NCBI GenBank assembly: GCA_000388065.2
Contig: KB932201.1
From: Fonticula alba ATCC 38817
Taxonomy: Eukaryota; Protista; Nucleariida
Strand: one strand, 5' to 3'
Length of the DNA: 64,000 bases
A model generated the notes under the pieces. The model worked only from the letters and a program-made list of their open reading frames with translations. It made no database searches and was not told where the DNA came from. A program made the position numbers and the translations under genes. Shown in pieces: positions 2,052 to 54,145 of the stretch. The number at the start of each line of letters is the position of its first letter. Position 1 is the stretch's first letter.

Positions 2052-3031
2052 ATGCCCTCCTCCTCGCGGCCCCTCTCCTCGGGACAGATCCGCAGCCTGG
2101 CGCTGCTGTCCTTCGACCACCTACTCAACCACCTGGGCGTGGCGGCACGCTCGCAAGCCCGGCGCGTGCTGCCCGAGCTGGAGGATGTCTCTTGGTGCGT
2201 CGCCGAGACACGGAAAGATGTCCATCATGCCCAGGCACATGTAGCGAGCCATGTCGCGACTAACGGGCCCCCTCCTGTGGCCTCTTTCCCTGCATTCGCC
2301 CTCCCCCCTCCCCCTTCCCTCCTCCTTCTCCTCCTCTCGGTATTCCTTCGACCCGGCGACACCGCTCCACCCTCAGCGCTGCCTTCCTGACTTGGGAGAA
2401 GTGCACGCCCGAGGGCGCCGTCGCTTCGCCGGCTCCGGGGGAGCTGCCTAAGCCCGTCGCTCGCCATGGAGGCTGGGCGCGGGCCGCTTTGCGCGGTTGC
2501 ACCGGGACCTTCCAGCCGAACCCCGTGGGTCCGCTCATCCGCCAGCTGGCCATTGGCTCGTGCGTTTTTCTGCCAGCGCCGATGTCTCGGACGATTGCCA
2601 GCGCCCCTACCCCTCTGACCCCTCGGCTGCCTCGCTCTTCTCTTTCTCCCTCTTTCTCCTTTGGCCCCCGCCCGACACCTCCTCAGCGCCGTGCGTGACA
2701 CGCGCTTCCCGCCGGTCACCTTGGCTGAGGTGCCGCTCCTCCGGGCCACGGTGTCCATCCTGCACAGCTTCGAGCCTATCACCGACAAAAACGACTGGCA
2801 AATCGGCACCCACGGTATTGAGATTGAGTTCCTCCGGCATGGGCGCCGCGTGGCCGGGGCAACCTTCTTGCCGAGTGTGATGGTGGACCATGGTGCGCCC
2901 GGCCAAACAGGGCAGGCGGGAGACTCCACCACCGGCCTCTGCTTCCTCTCGCCCTTGCACCATCTTCGCTGCCGCACACGGCCACACACGACCACACACG
3001 GCCATACACTGCCACACACTGCCACACACTG

Positions 3032-3072
<41 letters not shown>

Positions 3073-3273
3073 GCTTTCTTCAGGCTGACCTCCGTACGAT
3101 CAGGCTTCTCCCATGATGACACCTTCGACTATCTGGTGGATAAGGCCGGGCTTCGGCTGGCCGACTTCCTCGAAGCATATGAGCACCCATCGGCCGCCCT
3201 GTCGGTGGTGATCACCCGCTACCAAACGGCCACTTCGTCAGCCGACTACGCCGAATGGCTGGAGCAGTGCTGA
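2052..3273 (+). CDS. AMMECR1: AMMECR1-domain protein; exons 2052-2194, 2377-2559, 2687-2892, 3104-3273
   Basis: Spliced frame gives AAFLTW...LRGCTGTF...SAVRDTRFPPV...VSILHSFE...DWQIGTHGIEIEF...ATFLPSV...TRYQT, matching the AMMECR1 motifs LRGCIGTF, DxRFxP, WxxGxHGI and ATxLPxV. All introns are GT-AG and phase-consistent. Confidence 0.92.
3033..3070. repeat. (CA)n microsatellite in AMMECR1 intron 3
   Basis: Directly visible. (CA/TG)n tracts recur at about 3630-3655, 29670-29695, 30650-30685, 37678-37724 and 49063-49092. Confidence 0.95.
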
Positions 3274-3374
3274 GCTGCCCGTCATCTGAGCGGCCGTACG
3301 TGCGGCGGGGAGAAGGGCCATCAAACAAGCAAGCAAACAAATATCACTACCATTGCGTGCTATATTGGTGCCAT

Positions 3375-3408
<34 letters not shown>

Positions 3409-3709
3409 ACGATAACGATGACGATGACGACGGCGCTGCTCGAGGTGCCGCGTCGAGGGCTCAGAGAAGGAGACACAGGGGAGGCACCATACAGAGAGAT
3501 TGCCCGCAGGTTGGGACTGGTGCGGAGCATGGCGAAGGGATGGGCGCACACTCCCCTGCCTGTGGCCGCGCCTCGAGCGCCGGCAAATCACGCGAAGCAC
3601 GCCATCAAGCATCGCTCCCCGGGGCGAGCGTGTGTGTGTGTGTGTGTGTGTGTGTAGACATGTGTTTATGAATACCCGTACACGCGCACGCGCACGCGCA
3701 CTTGCACCT

Positions 3710-4378
3710 TTAGAAAGTGTGGTTGGCCAGGGCCTGCAGGCAGGCACGGCCGGCCTCCAGCTCAAGCTGGCGGCGAAGGTCGGCGCTGACGCCCTGGCCG
3801 GTGAGGCGGTTGAAGAGGATGATGGCCGCCGCAGAAGTGTCAATGCGGTTGGCCTCCCCCTCGGCGGGCAGGCAGATGTTGGCCAGGCGGAAGAGCTGGT
3901 AAGTCTCCATCTGCAGGGACCCGACATTCGGGAAGGCGGCGGCCATCTTGTCCAGCAGCCCGGCGTTGGCATCGGCGAAGTTGGCCGACGGCCGGCCCTG
4001 CGAGGAGTAGAACGAATCGGCGGTCAGGTCACAGGCCGGCTTCACGGAGCCGGTGGACAGGCAGCTGGTCATCTCCTTGACGAGCTGGTAAGGCGGGGGG
4101 GGGGGGGGGGGGGGAGGGAAAAGGGAAGCAAGGTCAGCACGGATCGCAGGGAGGAAAAAGGGCCCAGGGAGCGTGCACCGACGAACCAGATCCGAGAGGC
4201 CCTTGTGCGGCATCTCAAGCGGGGAGAAGGAGTAGGTAAACTGGCCGTCAGCATCGACGCCCTGGCAAACCAGAGAGCTGCCCTCGGAGTTGACAACCAC
4301 GGTGCCGGGGTCGACATCGGTGACAATCGACCCAGCCGAACCCAGACTGTGTGAAGCGTAAGAGGATGGAGCGAGAGG

Positions 4379-4416
<38 letters not shown>

Positions 4417-4873
4417 AAAGTGGTCAGCGTGCTGGTGCGAAGAAAACAGGGGGACCAGGGGAGCCCCAAAGGGTGGAATGGGAGCCAAACGAACCGGATG
4501 ATGACCATCGGGCCGTTGACAACAGCGCGGGCCTCGCGAATCATGAAGTCCATCATGGGCCGACCCTAGGGGGCGAAGGGAAGGAGTGAGTGACGGCCGC
4601 ACAGCAGGGCAGGATGGATGGCGCGGCATGACGGGCGTAAAGGGCATCGATGAAGCACGCGAGGCAGGCGCACCATGCCAATCGAGATGATGCTCAGCTC
4701 AACACCATTGTACATCCCGGTGTAGGTGTGGAAGCCGCGGTTGGAGAAGACCGTCCGGACGGTGGCCGGGTCGAGGTAGGCCTCGGCGATGAGCTTGGCG
4801 CGAGCCGGGTCACCGACGGACAGGATGCGGTGGGAAACTGGACCAGGCAGGGACGGCGGGTGAGAAACGCGCG

Positions 4874-4915
<42 letters not shown>

Positions 4916-5058
4916 GGGGAGGAGGGGGCATGAGATCGAAACAATGGGCGAAAGTGACGCGCGCACGCACCATCGCCAGGCTTGCAGCCGAGGTGGTAGA
5001 TACGCCCCTCGCCGTCCTGGGGCATGTCAGAGTTGTGCAGGGTGTTGAGGCTGGCCAT
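3710..5058 (-). CDS. Uridine/purine nucleoside phosphorylase (PNP_UDP superfamily); exons 5058-4971, 4837-4674, 4565-4495, 4346-4187, 4084-3710
   Basis: GRIYHLG, RILSVGDPARA, RGFHTYTG, SIISIGMGRPMMDF, IIRLGSAG, TADSFYSSQGR and MET motifs typical of uridine-phosphorylase-like enzymes; four phase-consistent GT-AG introns. Confidence 0.9.
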
Positions 5059-6277: not shown

Positions 6278-9200
6278 TCAGACACGCGAGAGGACGAGAC
6301 CAGCGAGGGAGGCAATCTTCCCGGCATCCGGAACCATGTTCGGGGACACCGTAGAGAGCCCCTGCAACAGCTGGCGATACTGAGGGTTCTTTTGGCAGGC
6401 GTCGGTCAGCTCGCCCACCAGGAGGCTCTGCACGTCTTGGACCTTGGGCAGGGGGTCCTCCTTGGTGGGGGTCACGGTGGACAGCTGGGTACGCATCAAG
6501 GCCGACAGACCCCCGCAGGGGGGGGGGCGGGGAGGGGGACGAGGTGCATGGGTAGGAGCGAGGGAAGGCCGGGGGGGTCAGCGGGGAAAAAAAAGTCCAC
6601 GCAGATGCGCCTTCACAAAAGGGGCATGTGTGACACGCACCGCGCTGAAGGAGCCGGTCGTCCCCTCGCCGCTGGCGACCGTGGAGTTGAGGAAGGCAGA
6701 CTCGAAGTCCTGCGAGGCGGAATAGTCGTCGGTCGTGGTGGCAGGCCGGTCGCCCAGCGTGAAGATGGCCTGCACCGTGTGGGGCAGGCGCTCGGCGTAG
6801 GTGGGCTCGAAAAAGAGCGGGCTCCGGGCGATCAGGTAGGCAAGGGCCACGGCAGCCACCTTCCGATCGATGGGCAGCCCGGCGCTGGCCTCCTCAGCAA
6901 GGAGGACCGAGTTGAGGACCATGTAGAAGAGGCTGATTGACGCGTGTTCGCATGGGCGTCAGAGCGCGGCGAGGCGGCAGCAAGGCACCCGGAGCAGGGG
7001 ATGGGAAGCCAAAGCATGGGGCAGGGCCGGGCGGGAGAGGCAGCGAGGAGGGGGGGCAGGCGGGAAGAACGCACTTGGGCTGGATCGTATTGAAGGCCGA
7101 CACAATGACCTGGAAGGAGTCGGGCTTGGCCACGATGAAACGCGAAACCACCCCGCCAAAGAGGCGCACGAAAACCGGGGTCTTGTTGGACTGGATGCGC
7201 TCCAGCAGGATGAGGAGCACGGTCGGCGCGAATTGCGTGAATGCCGGACTGAAAGAGACGACCAAAAGAAGGCCCGAGGATGGAGAGCGAGGGGGAGACA
7301 AACAAAGAGAAGGCGAGGGGGATGCCCAGCAGCGCGAGAGGCCGGGCCGAGAGACAGTCGCATGGGTCACACGATGGTAGAACAGCGAAGGCGGCAAGGA
7401 TGTGTGAGGTGAGGAAAGAGGTGTAAGCCAAATACACAAAGAGACAGAGAGATAGAGAGAGAGGGGCCGAAGGAGAAGGAGAAGGAACGAGACAAAAGCG
7501 GGACACGCACGCAGGCAGGTACACCAACAGCGACTCGGCCAGCTGGCAGGCGTCACGCTCAAAGGCCCGGGTGCCGATCATGCGCTTGAGAATGTCCATC
7601 AGGGGAGGAAGGAGATTGCGCGAAACGAACTCCTCCGGCACGCAGCGCAGGTATGCGCAGAAAAGCCGCGCGATGGCCGAAATGTTGGCCGACACCTCCC
7701 AGAGAACCGGCACAAAGAGCGACGGCAGGATGTCCAGGTAGAACTGATTGAGCGATGGCGCGGCCCCCGGGGCAGCCCCGGCGGCTTGGAGCACCGACGG
7801 ATTGGACTCCAGCATCAGGGCAATGATCTGGAAGGAGTACGGGATGAACTCGGCCACACCGGCCTTGAGAATCTCCCCCATGACCGGCAGGAGGGCCCGC
7901 TCAAAGCCGGCATGCAGCTCCAGCACCCGGGCCGGCAGCTCGGCCGGCGTCTGCCCGGTGGAGGCCAGGAACCCCGGCAGGGCGGGCGAGTGGGTCGGAA
8001 GCGGCCGGCTCAGGGCACCGATGGCCTCGAAGAGGCAATGCGACAGGCGCGGATTGCTGGGATTGGTGCAGATGATGGACAGCACCCCGAGGAGCTCCAC
8101 ATAGGCCGAGACGAAGATACGCGGCGCGGCCACCAGCACCGGCCGGTAGAAGAGCAGCGTCCGAACGACGGCCAGCATGGCATAATTGTTCTCCGACACC
8201 CGGAGCGGGGCCGTGCCATTGCGCATGAAAATGCTGAACATCCCGGCGAACAGGGGCTCCAGCAGCTCCAGCGCCACCGAGTGGGCCAGGGTCACCCGAT
8301 GCCGAGCGAAGTACTGGCCGACGGCCACCGCGGCGAAGGTGTGGAGAACCTGGTTCGGCGAGGCCAGCAGCCCCACCAGGTAGGGCATGGTCTTGAGCAC
8401 GATCTCGGTGCTGAGGTGATTGCGGAACATCACCAGGAAGTACAGCGACCGAGCAACCAGGAAGGGGAAGTGCGCGAAGTCCGGACTGGTGAGCGGGGTC
8501 TCGAAGATGGCAAACGCATCGTCCGGACTGAGGAACTCATTGGTGGCCACCACGCCATCACGCAGGGTGACACCGCCGGCCGAGGCGACGCTGTGCACCA
8601 GGGTCAGGGCGGCCTCCATGGCGCGCCAACTGTCGGGGCCCAGGGGCTGGCTGGTGAGCTGGTCCCGGGCGAGGCCGATGCAAATTTGCGTGAAGGACTC
8701 CCGGTACCGGGTGGCCAGGGCGTTGATGAGCCGGCCGGCCGTACTCCGGGGGGTGGCCGCGTCGTGGCCCTCCAGCTCGTGGCGCACATAATCCATCGGG
8801 GTATCTTCGAAGACCTCCTCGTCACTGTCGCGCAGCTGCAAGCTGGGGAGGATGATCTTGCTGGCCAGGAGGGTCAACCCCGGGGGGGTGCACACGGTGG
8901 TGGCGTAGGCGGGCTTGGAAACCACGGTACAAGTGTACCGGATGGCGGCGGCGACAAACTACAAACGAATGGGTGAGTATGGGCTTTGGGTGGAGGATGG
9001 GCCGGGGGTGGGCCGGAGCGGCGCGCGGGATCTGACTGCCCACATACCCGATCATAGGTGGAGCTCTCGGCAAAGCCCACCAGCAGGTGGAAGATGCTGT
9101 CGAAGAAGGAGGGCAGCTCCTTCTCGAAGTACTCGTGGTAGGAATTGGTGAAAAGGTCGATCAGAGCACACAGCGACAGCCGGAAGTAAGCCGGCGGGTT

Positions 9201-9533
9201 GGCGTAAGGGTCCTCCTCATCCTCGGGGTAGGTCCTCCCCTGGGGATGGAAGTGCAAGACGGCCCGCAGGACGGCGAACACCCGCGGCATGTTGACCTCG
9301 ATGTCATCCGGCAGGTCCAGGTAGCAGAGGGAAGTGATGATCTCGCACAGGAGCGACAAGCTATGGAAGGAGATGGCCAGGGTCTGGTCATCGGCGCCTG
9401 TGGTGATATGCGACCCGATCACCTCGGCGAATTGGGGAAGGACGTCCTTCAGCTCGGCCGAGGCCTGGAGCAGGTCCGCCACGAGTCGCTCAGTGCGATT
9501 GTGGCTCTTGAAGCTAGATCGACATGGGGGGGG

Positions 9534-9577
<44 letters not shown>

Positions 9578-10372
9578 CGCGGGGCGAGAGTGAGATACGA
9601 AAGGAGGAAGAGAAAGGAGAGGAGTCGAAAACGGGCGCGTGCAGATGTGGAGAGCCTGCGCACCGCTTGAGCACAGTGTTCAGGGCCTGGAGCACGGTGT
9701 TGATTTTGGCCGGGTTGGAGGTGTCCACCTCGGACAGCAGGAGTCCCAGCAGCTCGGGCCACTTGGAGGGGTACTGGGAATTGGAGATGGTCGCAAGGCA
9801 AGTGAGCAGCAGGTTGCGCTGGGGAGTCGACGAGCAGGAGAACAGCGCGGGGACAATGCGCTCGCGGATGGCAATGCGGTCGCCGGCCGGGAATGGCAGC
9901 CTGTCGGGGTTCTGGGATGCGAAAGGGACCGCAAGTGGGTGAGTGAGTGAGTGGCCGGGTGTGGTGGTGGGCGAAAGGAGGGAGAGAGAAGCAGGGGGGA
10001 GGCCGGGAAATGGGCGTACAGTGGCCGAGGTCCAGGCGATGGCCAAGAAGTTCTTGAGCATCAGGGCCGCCGAGAGGGAGACAGCCGGCTCGATGGAGGA
10101 GATGGACGCATCCATCGTGTCGCCGATGGCCAACGACAGGAGGATCGGCGCGTAGCCGGGAATCGAGGCGGCCGTCCTGAAGAATAGCTCGGCTGAATGG
10201 GGGTGCAGACGACCAAGGCAGGTGTGTGAGCTCGCCGGCAGGGGGGGGGGGGGGGAGACCGCGGAAAGGGAACATCAAAGGGCGGCGGCGGCCCAGGAAA
10301 CGAACCATCATTGACGGAGCCAACATCGGTCATGGCGCTCAGGGCGCTGATAATACGCTGAATCGAGGACAT
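6278..10372 (-). CDS. CSE1: Exportin-2 / CSE1 (CAS), ~1034 aa; exons 10372-10306, 10192-10020, 9911-9664, 9513-9048, 8958-7511, 7248-7075, 6932-6611, 6484-6278
   Basis: Importin-beta N-terminal-like start (AELFF...AALMLKNF...W), YPSKWPELL, EEVFEDTPMDYVRHELEGHD, LRVSENNYAMLAVVR, NPSNPRLSHCLFEAIG, EFIPYSFQI, ERIQSNKT and EDPLP, all matching Cse1/CAS. Exon lengths sum to 3105 nt in frame. Confidence 0.93.
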
Positions 10373-20649: not shown

Positions 20650-20700
<51 letters not shown>

Positions 20701-21194: not shown

Positions 21195-21240
<46 letters not shown>

Positions 21241-22912
21241 TTTCGCCCGCTTTGCCGCCGATCCTGAATCCGGTGGTCGCGTCCCCGGCTCCGGCGAGCT
21301 TTATGCGCTCTCCGCGCCCGGCATTCTTCCCGGACCCGTCGACCCAGCAGGAGGGCCCGGCAGCGACGGCGGACCTGCGGTCGCTGTCGGAACTGCTGGC
21401 CCTTTGCGCCCAGTCGCGGCCGGTGTCCTTCAGTTCGGTGATTGGTGCAAATGCCCTTGGCCGGTGTACCAAGATCGGCGAGAGCACCTTTGCTGAGGTC
21501 TTCTCGCTGGCGTGCGATGTCCCGTGTGCTGGCCCGAAGGGCAGTGCCTGTACCGGGAGCGGTGTGGCCCCGCGGCCTCCCCCAGCCGGGGTTGTCCTGA
21601 AGATCGTGCCCTTCAACGTCGGCTCCTTGTCCGGCACGGAGGGCGAGGGGCTCTCGGCCAATGAGGTGTACCAGGAAATCCGCATCACCCAGCAGCTTTC
21701 CGGCCTGGGCACCTTGCGCCAGGGTGGCAGTCCCACCGGAGGGGCTGCTGGCCGGGCGGCGCACTTCGCTTGTACCGATTGCCTGCCGGCCGGACATCCG
21801 GATGCCGGGGCCTTTGTGGCGGATGCCGCTCTCCAGGGCCCGGTGTCGCCCGGGTCCGGTCGGGAGCGCCGGATTTACACCTCTTCCTTCGTGCGTCTCC
21901 TCGGGGCCGGCATCTGCCATGGTCCCTTCCCGACGGAGCTCCTGACCGCGTGGAATGCCTTCCGGACGGCTGAGCCGGCGCGCGCCGTCAATCCCTCGCC
22001 CGCCGGTCTGCCCGCATCGCAACTCTTCGCGGTGATTGTGCTCGAACACGGCGGGACCGATCTCGAGCACTGCATTCTCCCCTCGCGCGTGGCTGCTCGG
22101 TCGATCCTCTTCCAAATCTGCCTGTCCCTGGCTTCGGTGGAGGCCTCGCATCAGTTTGAGCATCGTGACCTCCACTGGGGCAATGTCCTGGTGACGGCAT
22201 CGACGCCGGCCGGGCGCCGGCCCTCACTGCCGATCCTCAGCAGTGACGTCGACTCGGCTCCCTTCATGTTGGATGGCAACCTGGTGTCCATCGAGAACCA
22301 TGGCGTCCGGGCGACCATCATCGATTACACCCTGTCGCGCATGTTCCACAAGGATGAGCTCCTCTTCGTGCAGCTCGATGATGAGTCCTACTTCGAGGGT
22401 CGTGGTGCGTGTGCTCTCCTACTCCCCGTCCCTCTCCCGGCGGCCTCTGTGCTACCTCCTCCCCCCCCCATTTTCCTCTTCCCATCTTCACTTCTTCCCA
22501 TCTTCACTTCTGCTCGCTCGCTGGCCACGCTGACCATCAGTGCCCTTCATTTCTCCCCCCCCCCCTCTCTGTCTCTATCTTTCTCCTCTCTTTCCCAGGC
22601 GACTATCAATTCGATGTATACCGCAAAATGCGCCAGCTGACAGACAACGAGTGGGCAGCCCATGTGCCGGCCACCAATGTCTACTGGGTCTACTACCTGG
22701 CCGATAAGCTGCTGAACAGCGTGAAGTACGCTCCTCGGCGTGGGGACCCCGAGCGTCGACGCCAAGATGCGGGTGAGCGCTCGGCCCTGGCCAGCTTCCT
22801 GAAGCGCGTCCGGTCCTACGAGTCAGTCGGCCAGTTGGTCCGGGACCACTACTTCGCGGACCTTGTCACGGATGTGGCCATGCTCAACCGCATGCTTGTT
22901 CGCTTCGACTAG
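16719..22912 (+). CDS. HASPIN: Haspin-family kinase with a very long disordered N-terminus (~1999 aa); exons 16719-22404, 22599-22912
   Basis: C-terminal domain has CTKIGESTFAEVF, VVLKIVP, FEHRDLHWGNVLV, IIDYTLSR, EGRGDYQFDVYRKMR and W..HVPATNVYWVYYL, which are diagnostic of haspin. Spliced CDS is 6000 nt. The start codon is inferred, as the gap at 16151-16653 lies just upstream. Confidence 0.92.
20651..20699 (+). repeat. (CAG)n polyglutamine tract in haspin; second tract at ~21197-21239
   Basis: Pure CAG runs encoding roughly 16 and 14 Gln. Confidence 0.95.
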
Positions 22913-31157: not shown

Positions 31158-31744
31158 ATGAACCCCCGGTATGTGGCCGACCCTTGGCCGCAGCGGTCAC
31201 GCCGGTATGCCACAGACCCTCGCTCCACATCTGCCGTGGACCCGGCGACGGCCGACGCCACGGCTCTGGCCCAACTGGGGGCTACATCCAGTAGCCGGCA
31301 GCTGGCACACCTCTCCCAAAGGATCGCCTTGACCCAAAATGCCACGAACTCCGGCCGATCAACCGCACCGCCACCAGCCCCGACAGCACCCACACGCGAG
31401 CGCCCCCCGGTGCCGATGTCCTTCTTGGCCGGCGCTCGATCGGCCTTTTTCCCGCCCGGCGGCGGGCTACCAAGCGCCGCGGCCACAACCACCGGGCAGG
31501 CCGCACTCATGGCCGCGGCCCCCACCGCCGCCTCTCGCACGCCCAGCCCCGATGATGTGCTGGTCGACTCGCTCGTGGAGGACCTCCTGCAGGCTCGCGA
31601 CACGCTCCCCTCGCGCGCCCTTGCTTCCGAGCGGCCAGCCTGTGCGTACTCTCTCCCCCTCTCCCCACTCTTCGACTGTGGCCCGTCGGTCGGTGTTCTG
31701 GTGTCGAAACATCCCTTTAACCATCCATACATTGTCGTCGTCGT

Positions 31745-31790
<46 letters not shown>

Positions 31791-32589
31791 ACCACCACCA
31801 CCACCACAGTGGCCTATGTCTTCTCGAAATTGGTGGAGGATCTGCGCGCCGGACGCCTCCAGCCCGGATTGGCTGGCGATGCCGACCTCCTGAAGCATGC
31901 TTCGGATTCGACACTCAGCGGTGACGATGATGATGATGATGATGATGACTATAATGATGGTGATGATGTGGATGGTTTCCTCACGGGCGAGGATGACCCG
32001 GAGGGGCTTGGAGCCCGGCGCCGGCGCCGGCGGCTTCGTCGCCAGCAGCGTGGATCCTCCCGTTCAAATCACCCGGCCGACATGTCGCCAACCACTCGGC
32101 GCAAGCGGTTCCGGCCGAACCCGGCCAACGAGCAGGTCAACACCGCCCTCAGACAGTGCATCCATGCGGTCGAGCGGTGCGTCAACAGGCTTGACGGCCT
32201 TTCTTCTTCCCTGACGCGCTCCCTCTCCCTCCCCCCTCCCCCCGCCCACCCTCTCTCCCTCAGTATGCTTCACTTGGTCTTGGCATGTCCACTGATGTTG
32301 CAATGTCCCCAGCATTCGATCGGAGCACGCGTCATGGATTGCCCTCGAGGCAGATGTCACCCGAGTTGAGAGCATGGTTGATGTGAAGCTTGGCACTGTG
32401 GTGGATCGCTTGCTGGCCGACCTCCCGGAGCCCTTGCAGGAGGTCGTCTCAGCTGCCCTGTCCACTGACACTCGGCAGCTGTCCGAGAGCGATCTTGTGC
32501 GACAGGTTGCCCAGGCCACCGAGGCCTCGGTCCCAGCAAATGACTCCGCCGATGAGGGTGCCGGGGATGATCTCACGGCCAAGGCCTTT

Positions 32590-32620
<31 letters not shown>

Positions 32621-34272: not shown

Positions 34273-36150
34273 TTAGTGGCTGGCCATGTCGACGGCAGCC
34301 TCGAACATGGTGCGGCCCTGGCGCTTGGCAGTCCGGGCGGACAGCGCCTCGCCAGACACCTCGGCCGAGTAGGCAGCCGCCGACTTGGTGTCGAAGCGGT
34401 TGTACTCGAAGTCGGTGCCGAAAATGCCATCACGCAGCTCGTAGTCCAGCTCCTTACCAATGAGGGCGAAGTTCTTCGCGGCCTCGGTGGCATCAACGCC
34501 TGTGTCGAAGCGTACGCGCACCAGGCCAGAGGTGCACATGGTGGGAGAGTTCCGAGGGGCGGGGCCAGCGAGCGTTTTGTCAGTCATCCGTCGGAGGCAT
34601 GAGGAGCAAGAGGACGGGCAGCCCCGAATGGACCGGCCCTCCGGGGGCTCTCGATATCTCCTCCTTGGCTTTCTTCCGGCTCGCCTTTTCCGGGGAGAGC
34701 CTCGTGCCGTTGCCGGTTTCTCTTTCTCTCTCTCCCCCCCCCCCTTTTCCTTGCGCATCGCGCGAGCAAGGGAGACCGCATGCGAAACCCTTGGCGCACC
34801 ATCGACGATGAACTGGGCAGTCTGGCCGAGAATACCGTGCGGGGACTCGGGCTTGCCGAGCAGCGACACATGCAGGTTGGTGTACATCTCCTGCATGAGA
34901 CCCTTCTCGACCTTGGTACGGGCGGTCACCTGCCAGACCTCGGTCCGGACGGACAGGCGCCAGCGCCCGTCAATGTGCTCGAGGTCAATCTCGGCCTCGG
35001 GAAGCTCCAGCGAGCCGACCGGCAGCTGCTGGCCATTGAGGAAGGCACCGAAGCCGGGGTCGAAGCCGAGCACATGCGACCCGATCAGGAACCCGAGGCG
35101 GCCCATGTAGGTGCCCTTCAGCGCCTCGAGGCGGATGAAGTGGGCGTTCACCTGGAAGGTCTTGTCGGAGATGATGTTGTAGCTGTGCCCGGAGCGACCC
35201 TCAAAGTAGTACTGGCGGCCGTGGAAGGCCGAGAAGTGGGGATCCTGCTCGCCGGAGCCGTCAGGGATGGAGGAGCAGTCGCTGGTCCGGCGGCAAACCT
35301 TGGGGCTACCGCTGCAGCTGTACACCATCATGCCATTGGACACGCAGACCGCCACATCGGTGCAGGTGATGGAGTTGCTGTTGGTGAAGCAGTCGCGCTC
35401 GTTGCGGAAGCAGGACACCATCTCGCCAGCCGGGCAAGAGCACTCCCGGACGATCGGCTTGCTGGTGGGCTTGGGCTTGGAGGGCTTGCTGGTGGGCTTG
35501 GGCTTGGAGGGCTTGGTGGTGGGCCGAGGCTTGGACGGCTTGGTGGGCCGGGGCTTGGAGGGCTTGGTGGTGGGGGTGGGCTTCGGCACCGCGGTCGGGG
35601 TGGGCTTGGGCTTGGAGGGCTCGCTGGTGGGCTTGGGCACCGAGGTGGGCGTGGGCTTGGGCTTCGAGGGCTCGGAGGTAGGCTCGGGCGGCGGGGTGGG
35701 GTGCTTGCGAGACTTCTTGGCGCGCTTGCGGGCCTTCTTGGCCGCCTTCTTGGCGGCCTTGCGCTTGCGCTTCTCCTCCTTCTTGCCCTCGTCGTCCTCG
35801 TCATCCTCCTCGTCCTCCTCGTCCTCCTCCTCTTCCTCCTCCTCCTCCTCCTCCTCCTCCTCTTCCTCCTCCTCCTCGTCCTCCTCCTCGTCCTCCTCCT
35901 CGTCGTCGTCACGAGGACGGCGCTCCTTGCGCGCCTCGGCGGAAGAAGCGCCCGTCTTGGCGGCGGCGCCCGTCTTGGCGACCTTCTGATCGGCGGACTT
36001 GGCCTCGACAACGGCGCCGGCCTCATCGGAACGGGCCTGGCGCTCGATCTCGGCGGCCTTCTGCTCCTGGGGGATGATGGCGGCGTCGGCGTTGGCGGCG
36101 GCCACCATCATCATGGCGGCCGTGGCGGCCATCATGAGCTTCTGGGACAT
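34273..36150 (-). CDS. Secreted extensin-like protein with Cys-rich and VWD/Root_cap-like C-terminal domain (~525 aa); exons 36150-34800, 34499-34273
   Basis: Signal-peptide-like N-terminus (MSQKLMMAATAAMMMVAAANA), D/E tract, K/A tract, PTSKPSKPKP repeats, 8-Cys segment, then DPHF..F.G..YYFEG...YNIISD...VNAHF, HGILGQT and DYELRDGIFGTDF..NRF. Intron GTGCGC...CAG; CDS 1578 nt. Confidence 0.88.
   Translation of the reverse strand: MSQKLMMAATAAMMMVAAANADAAIIPQEQKAAEIERQARSDEAGAVVEAKSADQKVAKTGAAAKTGASSAEARKERRPRDDDEEEDEEEDEEEEEEEEEEEEEEEEEEDEEDEEDDEDDEGKKEEKRKRKAAKKAAKKARKRAKKSRKHPTPPPEPTSEPSKPKPTPTSVPKPTSEPSKPKPTPTAVPKPTPTTKPSKPRPTKPSKPRPTTKPSKPKPTSKPSKPKPTSKPIVRECSCPAGEMVSCFRNERDCFTNSNSITCTDVAVCVSNGMMVYSCSGSPKVCRRTSDCSSIPDGSGEQDPHFSAFHGRQYYFEGRSGHSYNIISDKTFQVNAHFIRLEALKGTYMGRLGFLIGSHVLGFDPGFGAFLNGQQLPVGSLELPEAEIDLEHIDGRWRLSVRTEVWQVTARTKVEKGLMQEMYTNLHVSLLGKPESPHGILGQTAQFIVDGAPRVSHAVSLARAMRKEKGGGEREKEKPATARGSPRKRRAGRKPRRRYREPPEGRSIRGCPSSCSSCLRRMTDKTLAGPAPRNSPTMCTSGLVRVRFDTGVDATEAAKNFALIGKELDYELRDGIFGTDFEYNRFDTKSAAAYSAEVSGEALSARTAKRQGRTMFEAAVDMASH
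35455..35700 (-). repeat. Coding tandem repeats of (K)PTSKPSKP(K/R) units
   Basis: Repeated gggcttgggcttggagggcttgctggt-type units on the + strand. Confidence 0.9.
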
Positions 36151-36937: not shown

Positions 36938-36985
<48 letters not shown>

Positions 36986-37676: not shown

Positions 37677-37727
<51 letters not shown>

Positions 37728-44300: not shown

Positions 44301-47300
44301 CGGCGTCAAAAGCACAGTGGCTCGGAGCTGCTGGGTGTAGTTGTCGTCATCGTCATCGAAATCCGACCCGCTGGACGAGGCATCCGAATCATAGGAATCA
44401 TAGGAGTCATACTCGCTGCCGGAGCCGGAATCGCTGTCATCCTCATCACCATCACTGGTGCCGCTGCTGCTGCTGCTGCTGCTGCCGCCACTGTCGCTGT
44501 TGTGGGTGCCGCACGATCCGTCAGACGCGGTGCCCAGGCCACCAACCGCCACCGCATACCCGGGGATGGTCTCCATCACCAGGAGGGAGGCGCCATCACC
44601 GGCAACGTCGGCCGCCGGGCCGTCCAATTGCGACAGCGGGATGCCAATGGCAGGGCTGATGAATGACTCCGCCTCAGAGTCACTGGCATCAGAGCTGTCG
44701 ATGAAATCGCCCGACTCATCGGAAGACTGGTCCGACCGCGAGTATGGGTGGTCCACAACCCGGCCGCCTGGAGCCGAGGGGTTATTGTCCGATCCGGCGT
44801 GCGAGCCGTCATCCAGCAGCACCAGCATGGGCTCCGGGGCATCGGCTTCCCCGCCAGACGTCGAAGAGGCCATGAGCGCATGGCCAATCGACCCGACATC
44901 AGGCTCCTCGTCCGGAACCACCCGGCTGACCGACAGCAGCTCTACCTCGTCGGCACTCGACAGGCCGCCATAACTGGAGTCCACGTCGAAGTCGACAATA
45001 ATGTTGGCCGGGGAGTCAGTGCCAGCTGTATCATCGATGCTGATGATTGACGAGCGCCGAAGGAGGCCCACGTGCTCGGCCAGAGAACCGATGACAACAA
45101 GTGTCTGAGGGGTGCGAAGAGGCAAAAGACAGAGCAGGGTAGGACAGAGTGAGTGAACGGTCAAGGTGCTCTTGAGAGGAGGAAGGTTGAGGGAAAGAGC
45201 AGGAGGAAGGTCGAGGGAAAGAGCAGGAGGAAGGTCGAGGGAAAGAGCAGGAGGAAGGTCGAGGGAAAGAGCAGGAGGAAGNNNNNNNNNNGAGGGAAAG
45301 AGCAGGAGGAAGGTCGAGGGAAAGAGCAGGAGGAAGGTCGAGGGAAAGAGCAGGAGGAAGGTCGAGGGAAAGAGCAGGAGGAAGAAAGGGAGAGAGAGAG
45401 AGAGCAAGAGAGGGAAAGGGAGAGCAAGAGAAGGAAAGGGAGAGCAAGAGAAGGAAAGAGAGAGCAAGAGAAGGAAAGAGAGAGAGGGAGAGAGAGAGAG
45501 AGAGAGAGAGAGAAACGGAAGACTGAGCGTCACGCACAACTGGGTGGATGCTATCATCGTCATCACCGTCATCGTCGTTGTCACCATCGTCGCTGCCATC
45601 CGAGTCACTGGAACTGCAATCCAGAGTGCTTGAGGAGGACTCGATGTCGACGTCCGATTCGGAGGCACCGGCCGCCTCCGACTGGCGGCCTGTCAAGGCT
45701 GACGCCATGGCCGAGGTAATGACTCGACTGAGGCTACCATCCTCGTCGAGATCTGAACTGAAGGAGAAAACGCCCACGTCGACGCTGGAATCACTGCCTT
45801 GCAGGGCCACCAGGCCGGTGGCCTCGATGTCCGAGTCACCCCCGCCACCGGACCCCAGCGGCGCAAGTTCGACGTCATGCAGAAGGTGCCCATGGCCCTG
45901 GAGCAGGAGGAACTCCACCTCGGACCCGGGTGACCCGATGTCGGAATCATCGTCGTCCGAGCTAGCCCGGTCCAGGATGGTGGTGGCAGCAGCAGCAGCA
46001 GCAGCCAGGGCAAGCTCATCCCCGGAGACATCCAACTCCGAGGAGGCGGTGAACTCATCGTCCTCCTCCTCGCCACCATCATCAGCATCAGCATCATCAT
46101 CATCACCATCGTCATCCTGCGCAGCCAGCACACCAATCAGGATGTGCTGGTCGTCGCTGACGGGCGAGCCTTCGGCATTGGAAGAAGGAATGAAAGCGCC
46201 ATCCGACTCGGCGTCCGACCCATCGGGGGACATCTGCTCGTGCAGGAGGGCCGCATACTCGGCGGCGGCAATGTCATCCGCTTCATCTTCCTCCTCCTCG
46301 TACTCGCCCTGGATGTCGTCAAAGTCCTCGGTCTCGTCGTCCTCCTCGTTGCCATCCTCCAGGTCGTCGTCATCGTCATCATCATCGTCATCGCCATCGT
46401 CATCGCCATTGGCATGACCATCGCTGCTGTCGATCAGAGACGAGGGGATCTGAGCCTCCCGATGGACTTCCTGGGGGCCGGCCTCGAGCTCGGCAACGAA
46501 CTCGTCGAAATCGAACAGCCGGCTGATGGCCAATGCGGATCCCGGCGACACGGGGGCATCCAATTGGCTGGTGCTCATCTCCCCGAGGCCCGGATCGAGG
46601 TCCGGCCCGCAGCTGGTGTCCGAGCAGGATTCAAAGCCAGCCTCATTGTCGGAACCGAAGGCACCGGCCGACACGGACACCATGGCCGAAGCCACGCCGG
46701 AGCGGATTTTGACCGCCTGCAGGATGGACCCCGTGGACACCAATCGAGAGACCGGCATCGGCGATAGGCCTGACAGGTCGCCATCCTGGAGGAAGAGTCC
46801 ACTCGAGGAGCCAAAGCCCGTAGACTGGCCCCCGCCGGCTGGATCGTCCATGTCCAGCAAGACCCCGGGCGGAAGGAAGGTCTCATCGGTGGCGAAGTCC
46901 GGCAGGGTGGACGACAGGGATGAAGGCGAGGGAGGATAGGAAGAGGGAGCCGAGTGGTGATGGTGCAGGTGCTCGTGGTGATGCAGGGGCTCGTGGTGGT
47001 GATGGAAGAGACGCTCGCCGGACAGCGACCGGGGGTAGGTCGGGTCGCCGGGGAACCCAACCGGGTCGTAGCCGATGGCGATTTCGTCATATAGGTGGTC
47101 AGACACCGGCGATGCCTGCAGGGAGGTCGCGCCCTGTAAGACGGCCCCGGGGTGGTCGGCCACCGGGGCCACCGCCAGAGAGCCAATCATCGGAGAAACC
47201 AAGTCAGCCATGGGGGTGGACCCCTGGCTGAGCGAGTGATGAAAGGAGCTGGAACCGGAGGTGGGCGTGCTGGCGCCGGAGACCACGACGGGTGCCGGGG

Positions 47301-48312
47301 GCGCGGCCTCCAGAAAGTCCGTATTACAGTGGGCCGACGCGGTGGCGGTCAGCTGCTCGGAGGAGAAGACCCGGTCCAGGGTGGTCGACCCGCTGCCGGG
47401 CCCGGAGGGAGGAAGGGCGGCCGTTTGGTCGGGATGAAAGAGCTGCTGGCTGGAGCTGCGCAGGGGGACGGCGGACGATCGCAAGAATTCCCCCCCCGGT
47501 GGCCGAGGCGGGAGGCCGGCATCGGCTGCCCCGAGAGACAGGGCAACCATCTTGGAGGGAGGGCCGGCCAGGGCATCCGGTCCGGCAGCACGGCCGCTGC
47601 CGCCAGGAACCACGGCCGCCGTGTATGAAGTCGCAGTGAAGGAAGCTCGACGTTTGTTGGTCGGGAGGGGCGAATCACTGGTATCCGATGATAGGTAGCT
47701 GGACGATTGCGAGTCGATGAATGAATAATTGTCCAGATCCTCCTCCTCGGCTTCGGCGGCCATGGGAATGGCAGGCCCCGGCAGGGGAGCGCCCCGGGCG
47801 GAGGCGCCCACATCGAAGGAGGTCTTTTCCCCGGGAGCCATCAGGTCTGGGGGGGGGGGGGGGGAGAAAGGATGACAGGATCAGTCAGGATCAGGTAGAG
47901 CCGAGGTCACAGACCGTCAGGAGGGCAGGAGGGCAGGAGGGGAGGGGGGGAGAGAGATGCCATGGGGTAGGTGGTGTACCGGTGGGATTGTCCGAGCTGC
48001 GGAGAGGGAGGAGGGCCGGGGCAATGTGAGTGATCAGCGAGAGGGAGAGAGAGAGAGGGGGGGGGGGGGCTGGGACATACCTGGCTGGCGAGGAGCAGGC
48101 ATCGTCCTCCCCCTCGTCGCTGGCAGACGTGAGCGACTGGTAGTCGATGTAGGAAGCGTGATCCAGAGATGAGGTGTGGAGGACACCGACGCTGTCGATG
48201 GGAAGATCAGGCGCCCCGGAGGAAGGGGGGAGGGGGAAGGAGGTCAGTTGCCACGAAGGCAGCCTAAAGCCGGCGTTAGCTTTGGAGCCAGTGTAAGGAC
48301 GCACCTCCCCAT
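41373..48312 (-). CDS. Giant intrinsically disordered protein (~2082 aa) with AT-hook-like, H1-like and many SIM-like motifs; exons 48312-48305, 48263-48081, 47996-47980, 47846-45538, 45104-41373
   Basis: Two long ORFs joined in phase by a GTGCGT...CAG intron (confident). The three small 5' exons are inferred from splice signals and frame (less certain). Total 6249 nt; no globular domain recognised. Confidence 0.8.
45189..45384. repeat. Intronic 24-bp minisatellite (GAGGGAAAGAGCAGGAGGAAGGTC)n, about 8 visible units around a 10-N gap
   Basis: Directly visible near-perfect tandem units; true copy number unresolved. Confidence 0.92.
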
Positions 48313-49058: not shown

Positions 49059-49096
<38 letters not shown>

Positions 49097-51381: not shown

Positions 51382-54145
51382 TCAGGGGGAGGGAGAGTAG
51401 GAGTACGGGCTGTAGTTCGTGGCGCCGCTGTCGCCGTCGTGCGCAGCGGCAGCAGCCGAGCTGCCGCCACGCGGGGAAACCGGCGACGCATCGCGGTGGT
51501 GGCGTGCGCCACCGGCGGACTTGCCACTGGCGCCGCTGACGCTCGACCGGCGGCCGGAGCCACGCGAGGACGAGGGCGCCGGGTCGGACGGCGAGATCAG
51601 GCTCGCGGGGTCCATGACACCCGAGTCGCCACCGGGGGAGTGATGGTGACGGCCGCCATAGGAGCCACCATCCTCCGCGGAGGGAGAGTGATGGCCGGCA
51701 GCGTGGGAGTCACCGGCGCGGCCGGCTTCGGAGCTGGCGCTGTTGCCGCCGTTGGAAACGTCATCAGACGCCGGGCGCCGGGAGGCGGCCGACCGGCCGC
51801 CACGGTCCTCGCCGCCATCGACGGCCGAGCCGCCATGGTGCTCGCCGACATCGGCAGACCGGGAGGAGGAAGAGGCGTCGTGCTCGGAGGAGGAGCGCGA
51901 GTTGCCGCCCTGGTGGCCGCCACGGCCGCCACCACGGCCACCACGACGGGACATCGAATCGCCGCCATACCCACCGGCACCATTGCCGCCGTTGTAGCCG
52001 CCGCGACGGTCGCGGCTGTTCCAGCCACCGCCGCCATAGCCACCACGGCGATCACCGCCGTAGCGCTCAGTGGCATAACGATCGCCACCGTAACGATCAC
52101 CGCCGTAACGATCGCCACCACCATAGCGGTCGCTGCCGCCATGGCGATCGCCGCCACCGTAGCGGTCAGCGCCACCATGACGATCGCTGCCGCTATGGCG
52201 GCTCCCGCGCTCCGGGCTGCGGCTAGACCCGCGATGACGCTCCGGGCTGCGCTCGGACCGGCGCTCGGGGCTCCGGTCAGACCGGCGCTCATCCGGACGC
52301 GAGGAAGACGAAGAAGCAGAAGTGGAGGAAGACCCGGCAGCAGTGCCGGCGGTGGAGACCTCATCGCGGCGATCGCCACGGCGACCCTCGTCGTGGCGAT
52401 CACGCGGACGCGAGGAATACCGGTCCGGGCTGCCGCCGCGAGTGTGGTCCGGGCTGCGATCGCGCTCGCGGCTGCGGTCGCGCTCGCGGCTGCGGTCGCG
52501 CTCGCGGCTGCGGTCGCGGCTGCGGCTGCGATGACGCCCATAGCGCTCCGGGCTCCAGCCCCGGTCGTCGTAGCGATCACGCTCGCCGCCGTAGTAGCCG
52601 CCACGGCCGCCACGGAAGCCGCCACGACCGCCGCGGAAGCCGGGACCGCCATGATGGCTGCCACGACCACTGGAGGGTGGAAAGTCCGTGTCAGGGGGGA
52701 ATCATCCGGCTGAGGGCAGGGAGAAGGGGGGGGGGCGGGAAAACGGAGGACAAGCAAATCGAGGGCATACCCATCAAGACGGCCGTTGCCACGACCGCGG
52801 TAGTTGTTGTTGGACCGACCGTGGGAGATCTCGACCGAGATGCTCCGGCCCTCGAAGGTGTGGCCGTTCAGCTGCTCCATGGCGCGGCGGGCATCATCCA
52901 TGTTGCCGAAGGTGACGAACGCGAAGCCTGGACATCAACAACGGAGGGGAGAGGGAGGGGGAGAGGAAAGCCACGCGCAGAAGGGGCCGGAAGGGGGTGC
53001 GGGTCCAAATGTCAGGAGGGAGGAGAGGCGGAGGGGGGGGGAGGGGGGGGAGGGGCATGAGAGCCGAGTGAAGAGGCAAGCGCTTTTGACGAACCGGGAG
53101 GATGGCGGGCAACCCAGAAGTCGACGACGTTGGCCTGTGCCTCGAAGAGTCGGCGAAGCTCGCGCTCGTCGGTGTGGTTGCCCAGGTTGCCGACATGGAC
53201 CTTGACACTGAAGAGGGGACGATCGGAGGGGAGATGGGAGAGGGGGCCGCGCGCGCGTGTGTCCCGGGTGCACAAGAGGAGTTAGGAGTCGGGTCTCACG
53301 TCGGGGGAGGCCGTGCACGGGAGGGAGGAGCGGCGGATGACGGCGGAGTCGGAGGGTGGGCGGTGGGCGGTGGACGGTGGCGAGCAGGCGAGCAGGCAGG
53401 CGAGCAAGCAAGCAGGCGGACAGGCGAGCAGGCAGGCAAGCAAGCAGCCTAGTGGCCAAACTGACAAGCAGACAGGCGGACAGGCGGACAGGAAGATATG
53501 CAGGCTTGATATCAAGTAGATAGTGATGCCAGTATCGGTGCCAGTGGCGGTGGCGATGGGAAGCGGCGGTGGCGGTGGAGGCGGTGGAGGCGCTTCTCTC
53601 TTGCCCTGCGAAAGACAGAGCAAGAGCGCCATGTCGAGGGAGTAGGAACCGGAAAGGGGGGGGGAGGGAAGAAACAGGAGAAGGAAATATGCGGATGGCG
53701 GATGGGAATGGACGAGGCAGACGAGAGACCAGACAGCGCGCGGCAAGGTGGGGAGGGCGCATGCGCGGCATGTGGAAGCCCTGACGGTAGAGTGGACCAA
53801 CATTCATACGTGCATGTGTATATGTGTGTGTGTGTGCATGCGCGTGCAGGTGTACACACGCAGACACATACATACATATACACATAACCACCCAAATACA
53901 CATTCGCGTGGGCAAAGGTGTGTGAAGCCATGCCCTCACAGGCAGGAGCTGCACAGCCTCGAAGAAGACAGTATACACACATACACACACACACACACAG
54001 CAGGGGGGCTGCCTCGGAAAACCCGAGGCGAAGACCCCTTCGGACAGTCGAACTCAGAGCATGGAAGGGAGGAAGAGGGGAAGCAAGGGAAGATGCTGGG
54101 AGGGGAGGAAAGTCACGGATGTGAAAGGGCATACGAATCAGGCAT
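51382..54145 (-). CDS. SRSF3/SRSF7-like SR protein (RRM plus RGG/RS/YGGDR tail, ~522 aa); exons 54145-54135, 53207-53095, 52927-52771, 52669-51382
   Basis: RRM KVHVGNLG...WVARHPPGFAFVTF..MDDARRAMEQLNG...ISVEIS matches SRp20/9G8 (WVARNPPGFAFVEF), followed by RSRSRDRSRERD repeats. CDS 1569 nt; the 11-nt first exon (ATG CCT GAT TC|GTATGC) is inferred. Confidence 0.9.

What the first reader, a model, noticed from the sequence alone, without database searches (positions are those of the whole stretch)
2195..54134. Splice donors follow a GTNCGY code: +4 C dominates and +4 A is absent from constitutive introns
Of about 25 coding introns I reconstructed, about 21 have C at +4: GTGCGT (2195, 2560, 4970, 7510, 7074, 22405, 25385, 31642, 32177, 45537, 48304), GTGCGC (2893, 4673, 9663, 34799), GTTCGT (4494, 4186, 10305, 53094), GTACGC (10019) and GTACAC (47979). 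The other four have +4 T (GTATGT/GTATGC). Many positions are fixed independently by protein homology (AMMECR1, CSE1, haspin, Lon, RRM). The usual eukaryotic consensus is GURAGU, or GUAUGU in budding yeast, and +4 faces the U6 ACAGAGA box and U1, with U6 m6A (METTL16) favouring +4 A. A +4 C consensus suggests a co-evolved U1/U6 sequence change or loss of the METTL16/SNRNP27 axis in this lineage (inference).
Basis: partly seen in the sequence, partly recalled or inferred. Interest (0 to 1): 0.8.

Follow-up and report, generated by a model that had tools for sequence, protein, structure and literature searches.

The report
Unusual intron-start code in Fonticula
In the slime-mould-like amoeba Fonticula alba, introns begin with GT-x-C-G-T or, less often, GT-x-T-G-T and never with the usual A at the fourth letter; this is real, but similar shifts are already described in a few other GC-rich protists.

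Summary
The window is Fonticula alba scaffold KB932201.1. All 21 listed hexamers sit at the stated coordinates.

- **Support for the introns:** RNA contigs give nine exact junctions and imply a tenth, and all ten have C at +4. Exact mapping of three annotated proteins, homologue alignments and Pfam continuity fix most of the others.
- **Counts in the window:** 26 introns, with +4 C in 22, +4 T in 4 and no purine. This is far beyond composition, even against intron interiors that are 49% C.
- **Correction:** the rule is GT-N-Y-G-Y rather than GTNCGY. The four homology-fixed introns of the CAD gene just past the window end all have +4 T.
- **Weak part of the claim:** absence of +4 A alone is only weakly significant in this A-poor DNA.
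- **Assembly gaps:** two introns span gaps, but their donors and junctions are unaffected.
- **Interpretation, partly supported:** an earlier follow-up in this scan reports a U1 whose 5' end is ACGUACCU. A G there would pair with C and wobble with U, which predicts the pyrimidine-only +4 seen here. I could not reach U1, U6 or METTL16 with these tools.
- **Already seen:** +4 C donors are published for Mamiellales, Thecamonas and Mastigamoeba, the last with the same U1 change. More than 15 other notes on this genome in this scan report the pattern.

Verdict: a new member of a known kind.

The parts
2195..2376 (+). AMMECR1 gene intron 1, donor GTGCGT
   Evidence: RNA contig junction in 4 runs. 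Annotated product length fits the three introns.
2560..2686 (+). AMMECR1 intron 2, donor GTGCGT
   Evidence: RNA contig junction.
2893..3103 (+). AMMECR1 intron 3, donor GTGCGC
   Evidence: RNA contig junction.
4085..4186 (-). PNP_UDP_1 gene intron, donor GTTCGT at 4186
   Evidence: Contig pieces end at 4084, and the remaining contig length equals the upstream exons. The annotated intron total of 491 nt equals the four introns.
4347..4494 (-). PNP gene intron, donor GTTCGT at 4494
   Evidence: RNA contig junction.
4566..4673 (-). PNP gene intron, donor GTGCGC at 4673
   Evidence: RNA contig junction.
4838..4970 (-). PNP gene intron, donor GTGCGT at 4970
   Evidence: RNA contig junction.
6485..6640 (-).
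   Evidence: RNA contig junction. Exact mapping of P0001.
6933..7074 (-). CSE1 intron 6, donor GTGCGT at 7074
   Evidence: RNA contig junction. Exact mapping of P0001.
7249..7510 (-). CSE1 intron 5, donor GTGCGT at 7510
   Evidence: RNA contig junction. Exact mapping of P0001.
8959..9047 (-). CSE1 intron 4, donor GTATGT at 9047 (+4 T)
   Evidence: Exact mapping of P0001. Homologue alignment is continuous at the junction.
9514..9663 (-). CSE1 intron 3, donor GTGCGC at 9663 (in frame, no stop)
   Evidence: Exact mapping of P0001. Read-through gives about 50 residues more than yeast Cse1. Homologue alignment is continuous.
9912..10019 (-). CSE1 intron 2, donor GTACGC at 10019
   Evidence: Exact mapping of P0001. 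Homologue alignment.
10193..10305 (-). CSE1 intron 1, donor GTTCGT at 10305
   Evidence: Exact mapping of P0001. Homologue alignment.
22405..22598 (+). Haspin kinase intron, donor GTGCGT
   Evidence: The Pfam Haspin_kinase profile runs 154-277 then 277-320 across the junction. The annotated intron total is 194 nt.
24920..25385 (-). Lon protease intron, donor GTGCGT at 25385; contains assembly gap 25060-25214
   Evidence: Exact mapping of P0004. The junction lies inside Walker B and is continuous in five homologues.
31642..31809 (+). Candidate intron, donor GTGCGT (unverified)
Evidence: Reading frame and composition only.
32177..32312 (+). Candidate intron, donor GTGCGT (unverified; acceptor ambiguous between 32263, 32312 and 32372)
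   Evidence: Reading frame and composition only.
34500..34799 (-). 300-nt in-frame intron, donor GTGCGC at 34799
   Evidence: The annotated intron total is 300 nt. It is the best-scoring single-intron solution. A CTGAC branch motif is followed by an AG-free stretch. The first 100 nt after the donor are purine-rich (36% pyrimidine), unlike the other introns, so confidence is lower.
45105..45537 (-). Orphan 2058-aa gene intron 4, donor GTGCGT at 45537; contains a 10-N gap inside a CT-rich tandem repeat
   Evidence: Mapping of P0011. Sequence inspection.
47847..47979 (-). Orphan gene intron 3, donor GTACAC at 47979 (the only donor without +5 G)
   Evidence: Mapping of P0011 and sequence inspection.
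47980..47996 (-). 17-nt micro-exon between two introns
   Evidence: P0011 residues 40-45 are encoded only by this segment.
47997..48080 (-). Orphan gene intron 2, donor GTATGT at 48080 (+4 T)
   Evidence: Mapping of P0011. The four introns sum to the annotated 763 nt.
48192..48304 (-). Orphan gene intron 1, donor GTGCGT at 48304, after an 8-nt first coding exon
   Evidence: Mapping of P0011. The annotated coding sequence starts at 48312.
52670..52770 (-). RRM gene intron, donor GTATGC at 52770 (+4 T)
   Evidence: It is the only pyrimidine-rich single-intron solution for the annotated 101 nt.
52928..53094 (-). RRM gene intron, donor GTTCGT at 53094; absent from the public annotation
   Evidence: It splits the RNP1 motif PPG|FAFVTF. 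RNP2 (KVHVGNL) lies in the upstream exon.
53208..54134 (-). Probable first intron of the RRM gene, donor GTATGC at 54134 (reading-frame logic only)
   Evidence: An 11-nt exon beginning with ATG joins in frame to ...VKVHVGNL.

Best explanation
These are ordinary major-spliceosome (U2-type, GT-AG) introns of Fonticula alba. In this lineage the 5' splice-site consensus has moved from GTRAGT to GT-N-Y-G-Y.

**What the donors look like.**
- GTGCGT is the commonest form. GTGCGC, GTTCGT, GTACGC and a minority GT(A/G)TG(T/C) class follow.
- In this sample +4 is C about three times in four, T otherwise, and never a purine.
- +5 G is nearly invariant.
- The exon side prefers G at -1 but not the usual A at -2.

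**Most likely mechanism (inferred, not shown here).** Fonticula's U1 snRNA carries G instead of U at position 5 (ACGUACCU).
- +4 C would then form a G-C pair and +4 U a G-U wobble.
- +3 G would wobble with U6 of U1.
- Purines at +4 would be excluded.

**Likely mutational route (also inferred).** AT-to-GC transitions from a GTATGT-type consensus under this genome's GC pressure: +3 A to G, +4 T to C and +6 T to C. The surviving GTATGT and GTGTGT donors would be intermediates.
For: **The organism and the introns.**
- The organism is Fonticula alba by 100% protein matches.
- Ten introns are supported by RNA contigs, and all have +4 C.
- Ten more follow from exact mapping of annotated proteins, with homologue or Pfam continuity for the CSE1, Lon and haspin junctions.
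- Four CAD introns are fixed by alignment to human CPS1 with no assumption about the donor.

**The pattern at +4.**
- In all, 30 donors give 22 C, 8 T and 0 purines at +4.
- C is enriched even against the 49% C of intron interiors (P about 2e-4).
- +3 and +4 covary. +3 A accompanies 6 of 8 +4 T donors but only 2 of 22 +4 C donors (Fisher P = 0.001). This is expected if total U1 duplex strength is what is selected.

**Pairing with U1.** Modelled duplexes with an ACGUAC U1 average -8.5 kcal/mol, against -3.8 with the canonical U1.

**Not plain GC pressure.** No G at +4 argues against it, because A to G would be the transition that GC pressure favours.

**Other features and sources.**
- Every intron has a CT(G/A/C)AC branch motif, mostly followed by an AG-free tract.
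- Earlier scan notes report the same donor pattern in more than 15 other windows, and a U1 with ACGUACCU.
- A precedent exists: Mastigamoeba balamuthi has U1 ACGUAC with GUGCGC donors (bioRxiv 10.1101/2022.06.08.495308).
Against: - I could not see Fonticula's U1, U6 or METTL16. The U1 change rests on another agent's report.
- Thecamonas and Mamiellales prefer +4 C while keeping a standard U1. A U1 change is therefore not needed for this pattern.
- The +4 T donors cluster: 4 of 4 in CAD against 4 of 26 elsewhere (P = 0.003). A single U1 rule does not explain this.
- The GTNCGY motif alone is not predictive. It has 222 matches in the window, several of them inside exons on the sense strand.
- The sample is 30 introns from about 70 kb.
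Confidence: 0.7

Rival explanations
1. The pattern comes from GC pressure alone. The +4 C consensus is a mutational by-product of a 65% GC genome acting on a GTATGT-like consensus. Position +4 is only weakly constrained to be a pyrimidine. No change in the splicing machinery is required, and any U1 change is secondary.
For: - Every step from GTATGT to GTGCGC is an AT-to-GC transition, and the intermediates GTATGT, GTGTGT and GTACGC all occur.
- Other GC-rich lineages (Mamiellales, Thecamonas) have +4 C with a standard U1.
- Intron interiors here are 49% C.
Against: - +4 C is still about twice the intron-interior C frequency (P about 2e-4).
- The +3/+4 covariation suggests selection on a duplex.
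- GTTCGT, seen four times, needs a transversion at +3.
Confidence: 0.2
2. The shift reflects a change on the U6 side. Either the ACAGAGA box is altered, or U6 m6A (METTL16) and SNRNP27K have been lost. Either change would remove the preference for +4 A, as in +4 U budding yeasts.
For: - Loss of METTL16/SNRNP27K correlates with loss of +4 A preference in Saccharomycotina (PMC10581693).
- +4 A is absent here.
Against: - In those yeasts the preference moves to +4 U, not +4 C, and the U6 ACAGA box is invariant in 240 species.
- An unchecked first-reader note says this genome keeps METTL16 (s1-066369).
- Nothing tested here bears on U6.
Confidence: 0.07
3. The pattern is an artefact. The reader chose donors because they fitted the motif, or a trained gene finder in the public annotation did so.
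For: The motif is frequent in this DNA (222 matches). Length-only gene-model solutions are far from unique.
Against: - The nine RNA junctions are independent of any motif choice, and all are +4 C.
- The Lon, CSE1, haspin, RRM and CAD junctions are fixed by homology.
Confidence: 0.03

Closest known systems
Mastigamoeba balamuthi donors (GUGCGC) with U1 ACGUAC (Roy & Bowser 2022, bioRxiv 10.1101/2022.06.08.495308)
   Same: The donor consensus is the same: +3 G, +4 C, +5 G and +6 C or T. According to the earlier scan note, the U1 position-5 U-to-G change is also the same. In both, +3 G pairs only by wobble.
   Different: The lineage is unrelated (Amoebozoa, against Holomycota here), so the change would be independent. 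Fonticula's +6 is mostly T. Fonticula keeps a sizeable GT(A/G)TGT class. Its U1 was not seen here.
Mamiellales (Ostreococcus GTGCGTG, Micromonas GYGCGY) and Thecamonas trahens +4 C donors
   Same: These are GC-rich genomes with short introns, a strong atypical donor with +4 C, and a CTGAC-type branch motif (PMC2483917).
   Different: Those lineages keep the standard U1 ACUUAC. Ostreococcus adds +7 G, which is not seen here.
GUAUGU donors of Saccharomycotina, Giardia and Trichomonas
   Same: +4 is a pyrimidine with strong +5 G and +6 U. The minority class here is literally GTATGT.
   Different: In those lineages +4 is U, not C. U1 and U6 are unchanged, and the shift tracks loss of METTL16/SNRNP27K (PMC10581693).
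Entamoeba GUUUGU donors with U1 ACAAAC
   Same: Donor and U1 have co-evolved.
   Different: The bases differ (+3 U, +4 U), and the genome is AT-rich and intron-poor.

Membership tests
U2-type (major spliceosome) GT-AG introns | GT at +1/+2 and AG at the 3' end | tested here: met
   All 26 window introns and all 4 CAD introns meet this.
U2-type (major spliceosome) GT-AG introns | Branch-point motif of the CTRAY type upstream of a pyrimidine tract | tested here: met
   CT(G/A/C)AC is present in all 23 introns examined. The branch A lies 15-161 nt from the 3' splice site, and the tract between them is mostly AG-free. Intron interiors are 77% pyrimidine.
U2-type (major spliceosome) GT-AG introns | Removed from mature RNA | tested here: met
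   Nine junctions appear in RNA contigs of four runs from two samples. The other introns were not tested with RNA.
U12-type (minor) introns | Donor [AG]TATCCTT and a TCCTTAAC branch site | tested here: not met
   No donor has TCC at +4..+6.
Lineages with a +4 C donor consensus (Mamiellales, Thecamonas, Mastigamoeba) | C is the majority base at +4, with +5 G | tested here: met
   +4 C is 22/26 in the window and 22/30 with CAD. +5 G is 25/26 in the window and 29/30 with CAD.
Lineages with a +4 C donor consensus (Mamiellales, Thecamonas, Mastigamoeba) | The pattern holds genome-wide | tested here: inconclusive
   Only about 70 kb was examined here. More than 15 unchecked first-reader notes from other windows agree.
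Co-evolved U1/donor systems (Mastigamoeba type) | U1 5' end ACGUAC, complementary to +4 C | not testable with these tools
There is no U1 in the window or in L001-L003. The Fonticula genome cannot be searched by pattern.
Co-evolved U1/donor systems (Mastigamoeba type) | Donors pair better with the variant U1 than with the canonical one | tested here: met
   Mean duplex energy is -8.5 against -3.8 kcal/mol, and every one of the 23 donors improves. This is a calculation on the assumed U1 sequence.
METTL16/SNRNP27K-loss lineages (+4 A preference lost) | Absence of METTL16 and SNRNP27K genes | not testable with these tools
An unchecked note says METTL16 is kept.

The most novel reading that the evidence does not exclude
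Fonticula alba may combine three things: a single expressed U1 with G at position 5, a canonical U6 ACAGAGA box, and an intact METTL16. Its introns would then fall into two classes. The +4 C class pairs strongly with U1 but mismatches U6 A43. The +4 U class wobbles with U1 but pairs with U6. The classes appear to be distributed by gene, since CAD is all +4 U. That would be a natural experiment separating the U1 and U6 constraints on position +4, in the sister lineage of fungi. It would also be a second, independent origin of the U1 U5-to-G change.
Probability: 0.35. Interest if true: 0.65.

Novelty: new member of a known kind. Interest (0 to 1): 0.45.

Why it matters
Position +4 of the 5' splice site is read in turn by U1 (position 5) and by U6 (m6A43). 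Recent work links its evolution to METTL16 and SNRNP27K. Across 240 fungal genomes, neither the U1 5'-splice-site-binding sequence nor the U6 ACAGA box ever changes.

Fonticula belongs to the sister group of fungi. A +4 C/U-only code there, with a matching U1 change, would be a rare natural case of donor and snRNA co-evolution. It would be only the second case of this particular substitution.

There is also a practical consequence. Gene finders and splice-aware aligners trained on GTRAGT will mis-model Fonticula genes. One example is in this window, where the annotated RRM gene lacks its first two exons.

Tried and rejected
1. **Metagenome scan for a G5 U1.** I searched for the G5 5' end plus the U1-70K loop motif. 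It returned 27 loci, and none is U1 by Rfam, so they are chance matches. This route to Fonticula's U1 failed.
2. **Rfam on the window and L001-L003.** No snRNA was found.
3. **Third homologue search, on the 51385-52701 ORF.** It did not return the window's own protein, so that gene had to be solved by domain logic.
4. **Rebuilding gene models from annotated product length alone.** There are tens to tens of thousands of stop-free solutions in this GC-rich DNA. I used this only where a single pyrimidine-rich solution stood out.
5. **Using the GTNCGY motif as a predictor.** It has 222 matches, many of them exonic, so the motif is necessary-like but not sufficient.
6. **The part of L001 beyond the window start.** The locus holds 4078 N and no scoring ORF was found in that stretch, so it gave no extra introns.
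7. **'Organism B' RNA runs.** Their label comes from DNA runs listed alongside metagenome runs as partial holders of this stretch, so I did not lay them.
8. **Literature.** No paper in the library describes Fonticula's donors or snRNAs.
Full report
**What the window is**

The window is 64 kb of 65% GC, gene-dense eukaryotic DNA with nine N gaps.
- Three proteins encoded here are 100% identical to Fonticula alba entries: H696_00168, H696_00171 and a 2058-aa orphan.
- They lie on scaffold KB932201.1 of GCA_000388065.2. Window position 1 corresponds to about record position 785300.
- Genes recognised:
  - AMMECR1, a PNP_UDP_1 protein, CSE1/CAS, haspin kinase and Lon protease;
  - a 525-aa protein and a 382-aa protein;
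  - the 2058-aa orphan, an RRM protein, a UBC-type E2, and the C-terminal half of CAD.
- Rfam and ARAGORN find no RNA gene in the window.

**Checking the observation**

- It returned nine GT..AG junctions.
- A tenth, at 4186, follows from contig pieces that stop at 4084 with exactly the right amount of contig left for the upstream exons.
- All ten have C at +4.

Outside that stretch I used the public proteins as exact templates.
- **CSE1** maps with seven introns. The four not covered by RNA sit at places where two distant homologues align without gaps.
- **Lon** maps with one intron, whose junction lies inside the Walker B motif LILIDE|IDK, conserved in five homologues.
- **The orphan gene** maps with four introns and a 17-nt micro-exon. 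Their lengths sum to the 763 nt implied by the annotation.
- **Haspin**: the 194-nt intron is fixed by Pfam profile continuity, 277 to 277.
- **RRM gene**: the intron at 53094 splits the RNP1 motif PPG|FAFVTF, with RNP2 in the upstream exon. The public annotation starts this gene too late and misses that exon.
- **Unverified**: the two donors at 31642 and 32177 look like introns, but they do not add up to the annotated intron total, and the gene abuts a gap. The 927-nt first intron of the RRM gene rests on reading-frame logic only.

**Assembly gaps**
- Gap 25060-25214 lies inside the Lon intron. The continuous Walker B motif shows that no exon is hidden there.
- Gap 45282-45291 lies inside a CT-rich tandem repeat within an intron of the orphan gene.
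- Gaps 16151-16653 and 27820-27970 lie outside the annotated coding sequences.
- Gap 32688-33232 is the reason the 31-34 kb gene model stays open.
- Gap 39240-40079 carries no claim.

**Numbers**

| Set | n | +4 C | +4 T | +4 purine |
|---|---|---|---|---|
| RNA- or homology-supported, window | 16 | 15 | 1 | 0 |
| All window introns | 26 | 22 | 4 | 0 |
| Window plus four CAD introns | 30 | 22 | 8 | 0 |

- Position +5 is G in 25 of 26 window donors. Position +6 is T in 18 and C in 8. Position +3 is G in 16, A in 6 and T in 4.
- On the exon side, -1 is G in 18 of 26. Position -2 is T more often than the usual A.
- C follows 30% of all GT sites in the window. Intron interiors are 49% C, 28% T, 14% G and 9% A.
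- The +4 C excess has P between 1e-7 and 9e-9 against all GT sites, and about 2e-4 against intron interiors.
- The complete lack of purines at +4 has P = 6e-8 against all GT sites.
- The lack of A alone is only weakly significant (P = 0.02-0.1), because A is rare here.

**A correction from just outside the window**

The CAD gene runs off the window end, and locus L003 holds the rest.
- I aligned its reading-frame pieces to human CPS1. I then joined them so that ITAQ|NHG, PD-G-ISV, NLVAE-A-SIK and GFEA|NTV read through. This fixes four introns without any assumption about donors.
- Their donors are GTGTGT, GTGTGT, GTATGT and GTATGT, so all four have +4 T.
- With these the tally is 22 C, 8 T and 0 purines.
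- The rule is therefore GT-N-Y-G-Y with C favoured, not GTNCGY.
- The +4 T donors are unevenly spread: 4 of 4 in CAD against 4 of 26 elsewhere (P = 0.003).
- Positions +3 and +4 covary. A at +3 goes with T at +4 in 6 of 8 donors, but with C at +4 in only 2 of 22 (P = 0.001).

**How it most likely works**

Shown here:
- These are GT-AG introns removed from RNA.
- They have CT(G/A/C)AC branch motifs 15-161 nt from the 3' end, mostly followed by AG-free pyrimidine tracts.

Inferred:
- Position +4 normally pairs with U1 position 5. After hand-over it faces the central A of the U6 ACAGAGA box. This is established knowledge, summarised in PMC10581693.
- An earlier follow-up in this scan (s1-065344) reports a Fonticula U1 gene with ACGUACCU. 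I could not reach that locus.
- If the report is right, G5 pairs with +4 C, wobbles with +4 U and rejects purines. That is exactly the distribution seen.
- Modelled duplexes improve for every donor, with the mean moving from -3.8 to -8.5 kcal/mol.
- The +3/+4 covariation fits selection on total duplex strength.
- Simple GC pressure does not explain the data. It would favour the A-to-G transition at +4, and G never occurs there.
- GC pressure can, however, explain the route. GTATGT, GTGTGT or GTACGC, GTGCGT and GTGCGC form a series of AT-to-GC transitions, and all of them are present.

**Comparison with what is known**
- Roy & Bowser (bioRxiv 10.1101/2022.06.08.495308) describe Mastigamoeba balamuthi with GUGCGC donors and a U1 reading ACGUAC.
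- The same preprint reports Thecamonas trahens and Mamiellales with +4 C but a standard U1, and Entamoeba with GUUUGU donors and U1 ACAAAC.
- Irimia & Roy (PMC2483917) gave GTGCGTG for Ostreococcus.
- Parker et al. (PMC10581693) found the 5'-splice-site-binding sequence of U1 and the ACAGA box of U6 invariant across 240 fungal genomes. They tied +4 A/U switches to METTL16 and SNRNP27K.
- No paper in the library mentions Fonticula's donors or snRNAs.
- The finding is therefore a new member of a known kind. It was also noted many times in this scan on other parts of the same genome.

**What I could not do**
- Fonticula's U1, U6, METTL16 and SNRNP27K were out of reach.
- The genome is not in a pattern-searchable collection.
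- A metagenome scan for a G5-type U1 gave only chance matches.
One unchecked note says the gene is kept.

Noticed in passing
L003:17406-20143 (minus strand; beyond the window end, about window 65136-67873): All four homology-fixed introns in this part of the CAD gene have +4 T donors (GTGTGT twice, GTATGT twice). Elsewhere +4 T is 4 of 26. The +4 T class seems clustered by gene. One of these introns (17406-17529) also contains an assembly gap.
   Followed up: partly
window 51382-54145 (minus strand): The public annotation of the RRM protein (472 aa, starting at 52901) appears to be cut short at the 5' end. The RNP2 half of the RRM lies in an unannotated exon at 53095-53207. A probable 11-nt first coding exon lies at 54135-54145.
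   Followed up: partly
window 47980-47996 (minus strand): A 17-nt micro-exon in the 2058-aa orphan gene is flanked by a GTATGT intron and by the only donor lacking +5 G (GTACAC). The same gene has an 8-nt first coding exon at 48305-48312.
   Followed up: yes
all introns listed in parts: Intron interiors are extremely C-rich on the sense strand (49% C, 28% T, 9% A). They carry long poly-C runs and CT or CA microsatellites. CT(G/A/C)AC branch motifs lie 15-161 nt from the 3' splice site, and the stretch between is mostly AG-free.
   Followed up: partly
window 9514-9663, 9912-10019 and 34500-34799 (minus strand); 31642-31809 (plus strand, unverified): Several introns are multiples of 3 nt with no stop codon, so read-through leaves long open frames. 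ORF-based gene calling in this GC-rich genome will swallow such introns.
   Followed up: yes
window 875-1600 (plus strand): A coding-like open frame (codon score 64) lies next to gap 1602-1781. It has no annotated gene and no Pfam match.
   Followed up: no
window 12000-16000: A 72% GC stretch has many long ORFs on both strands but no coding signal under the codon model. No gene is annotated between the 140-aa gene and haspin.
   Followed up: no
window 2100-8000: Soil and sediment metagenome DNA runs, and a set of 2025 runs under another organism label, hold 30-59% of the sampled words of this stretch. A sludge metagenome run holds 7%. Fonticula alba or a very close relative therefore seems to occur in those samples.
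   Followed up: no
window 11260-11842 (minus strand): An annotated 140-aa gene has poor coding score and 160 nt of intron. The only single-intron solution has donor GTACGA. The gene may be spurious.
   Followed up: partly
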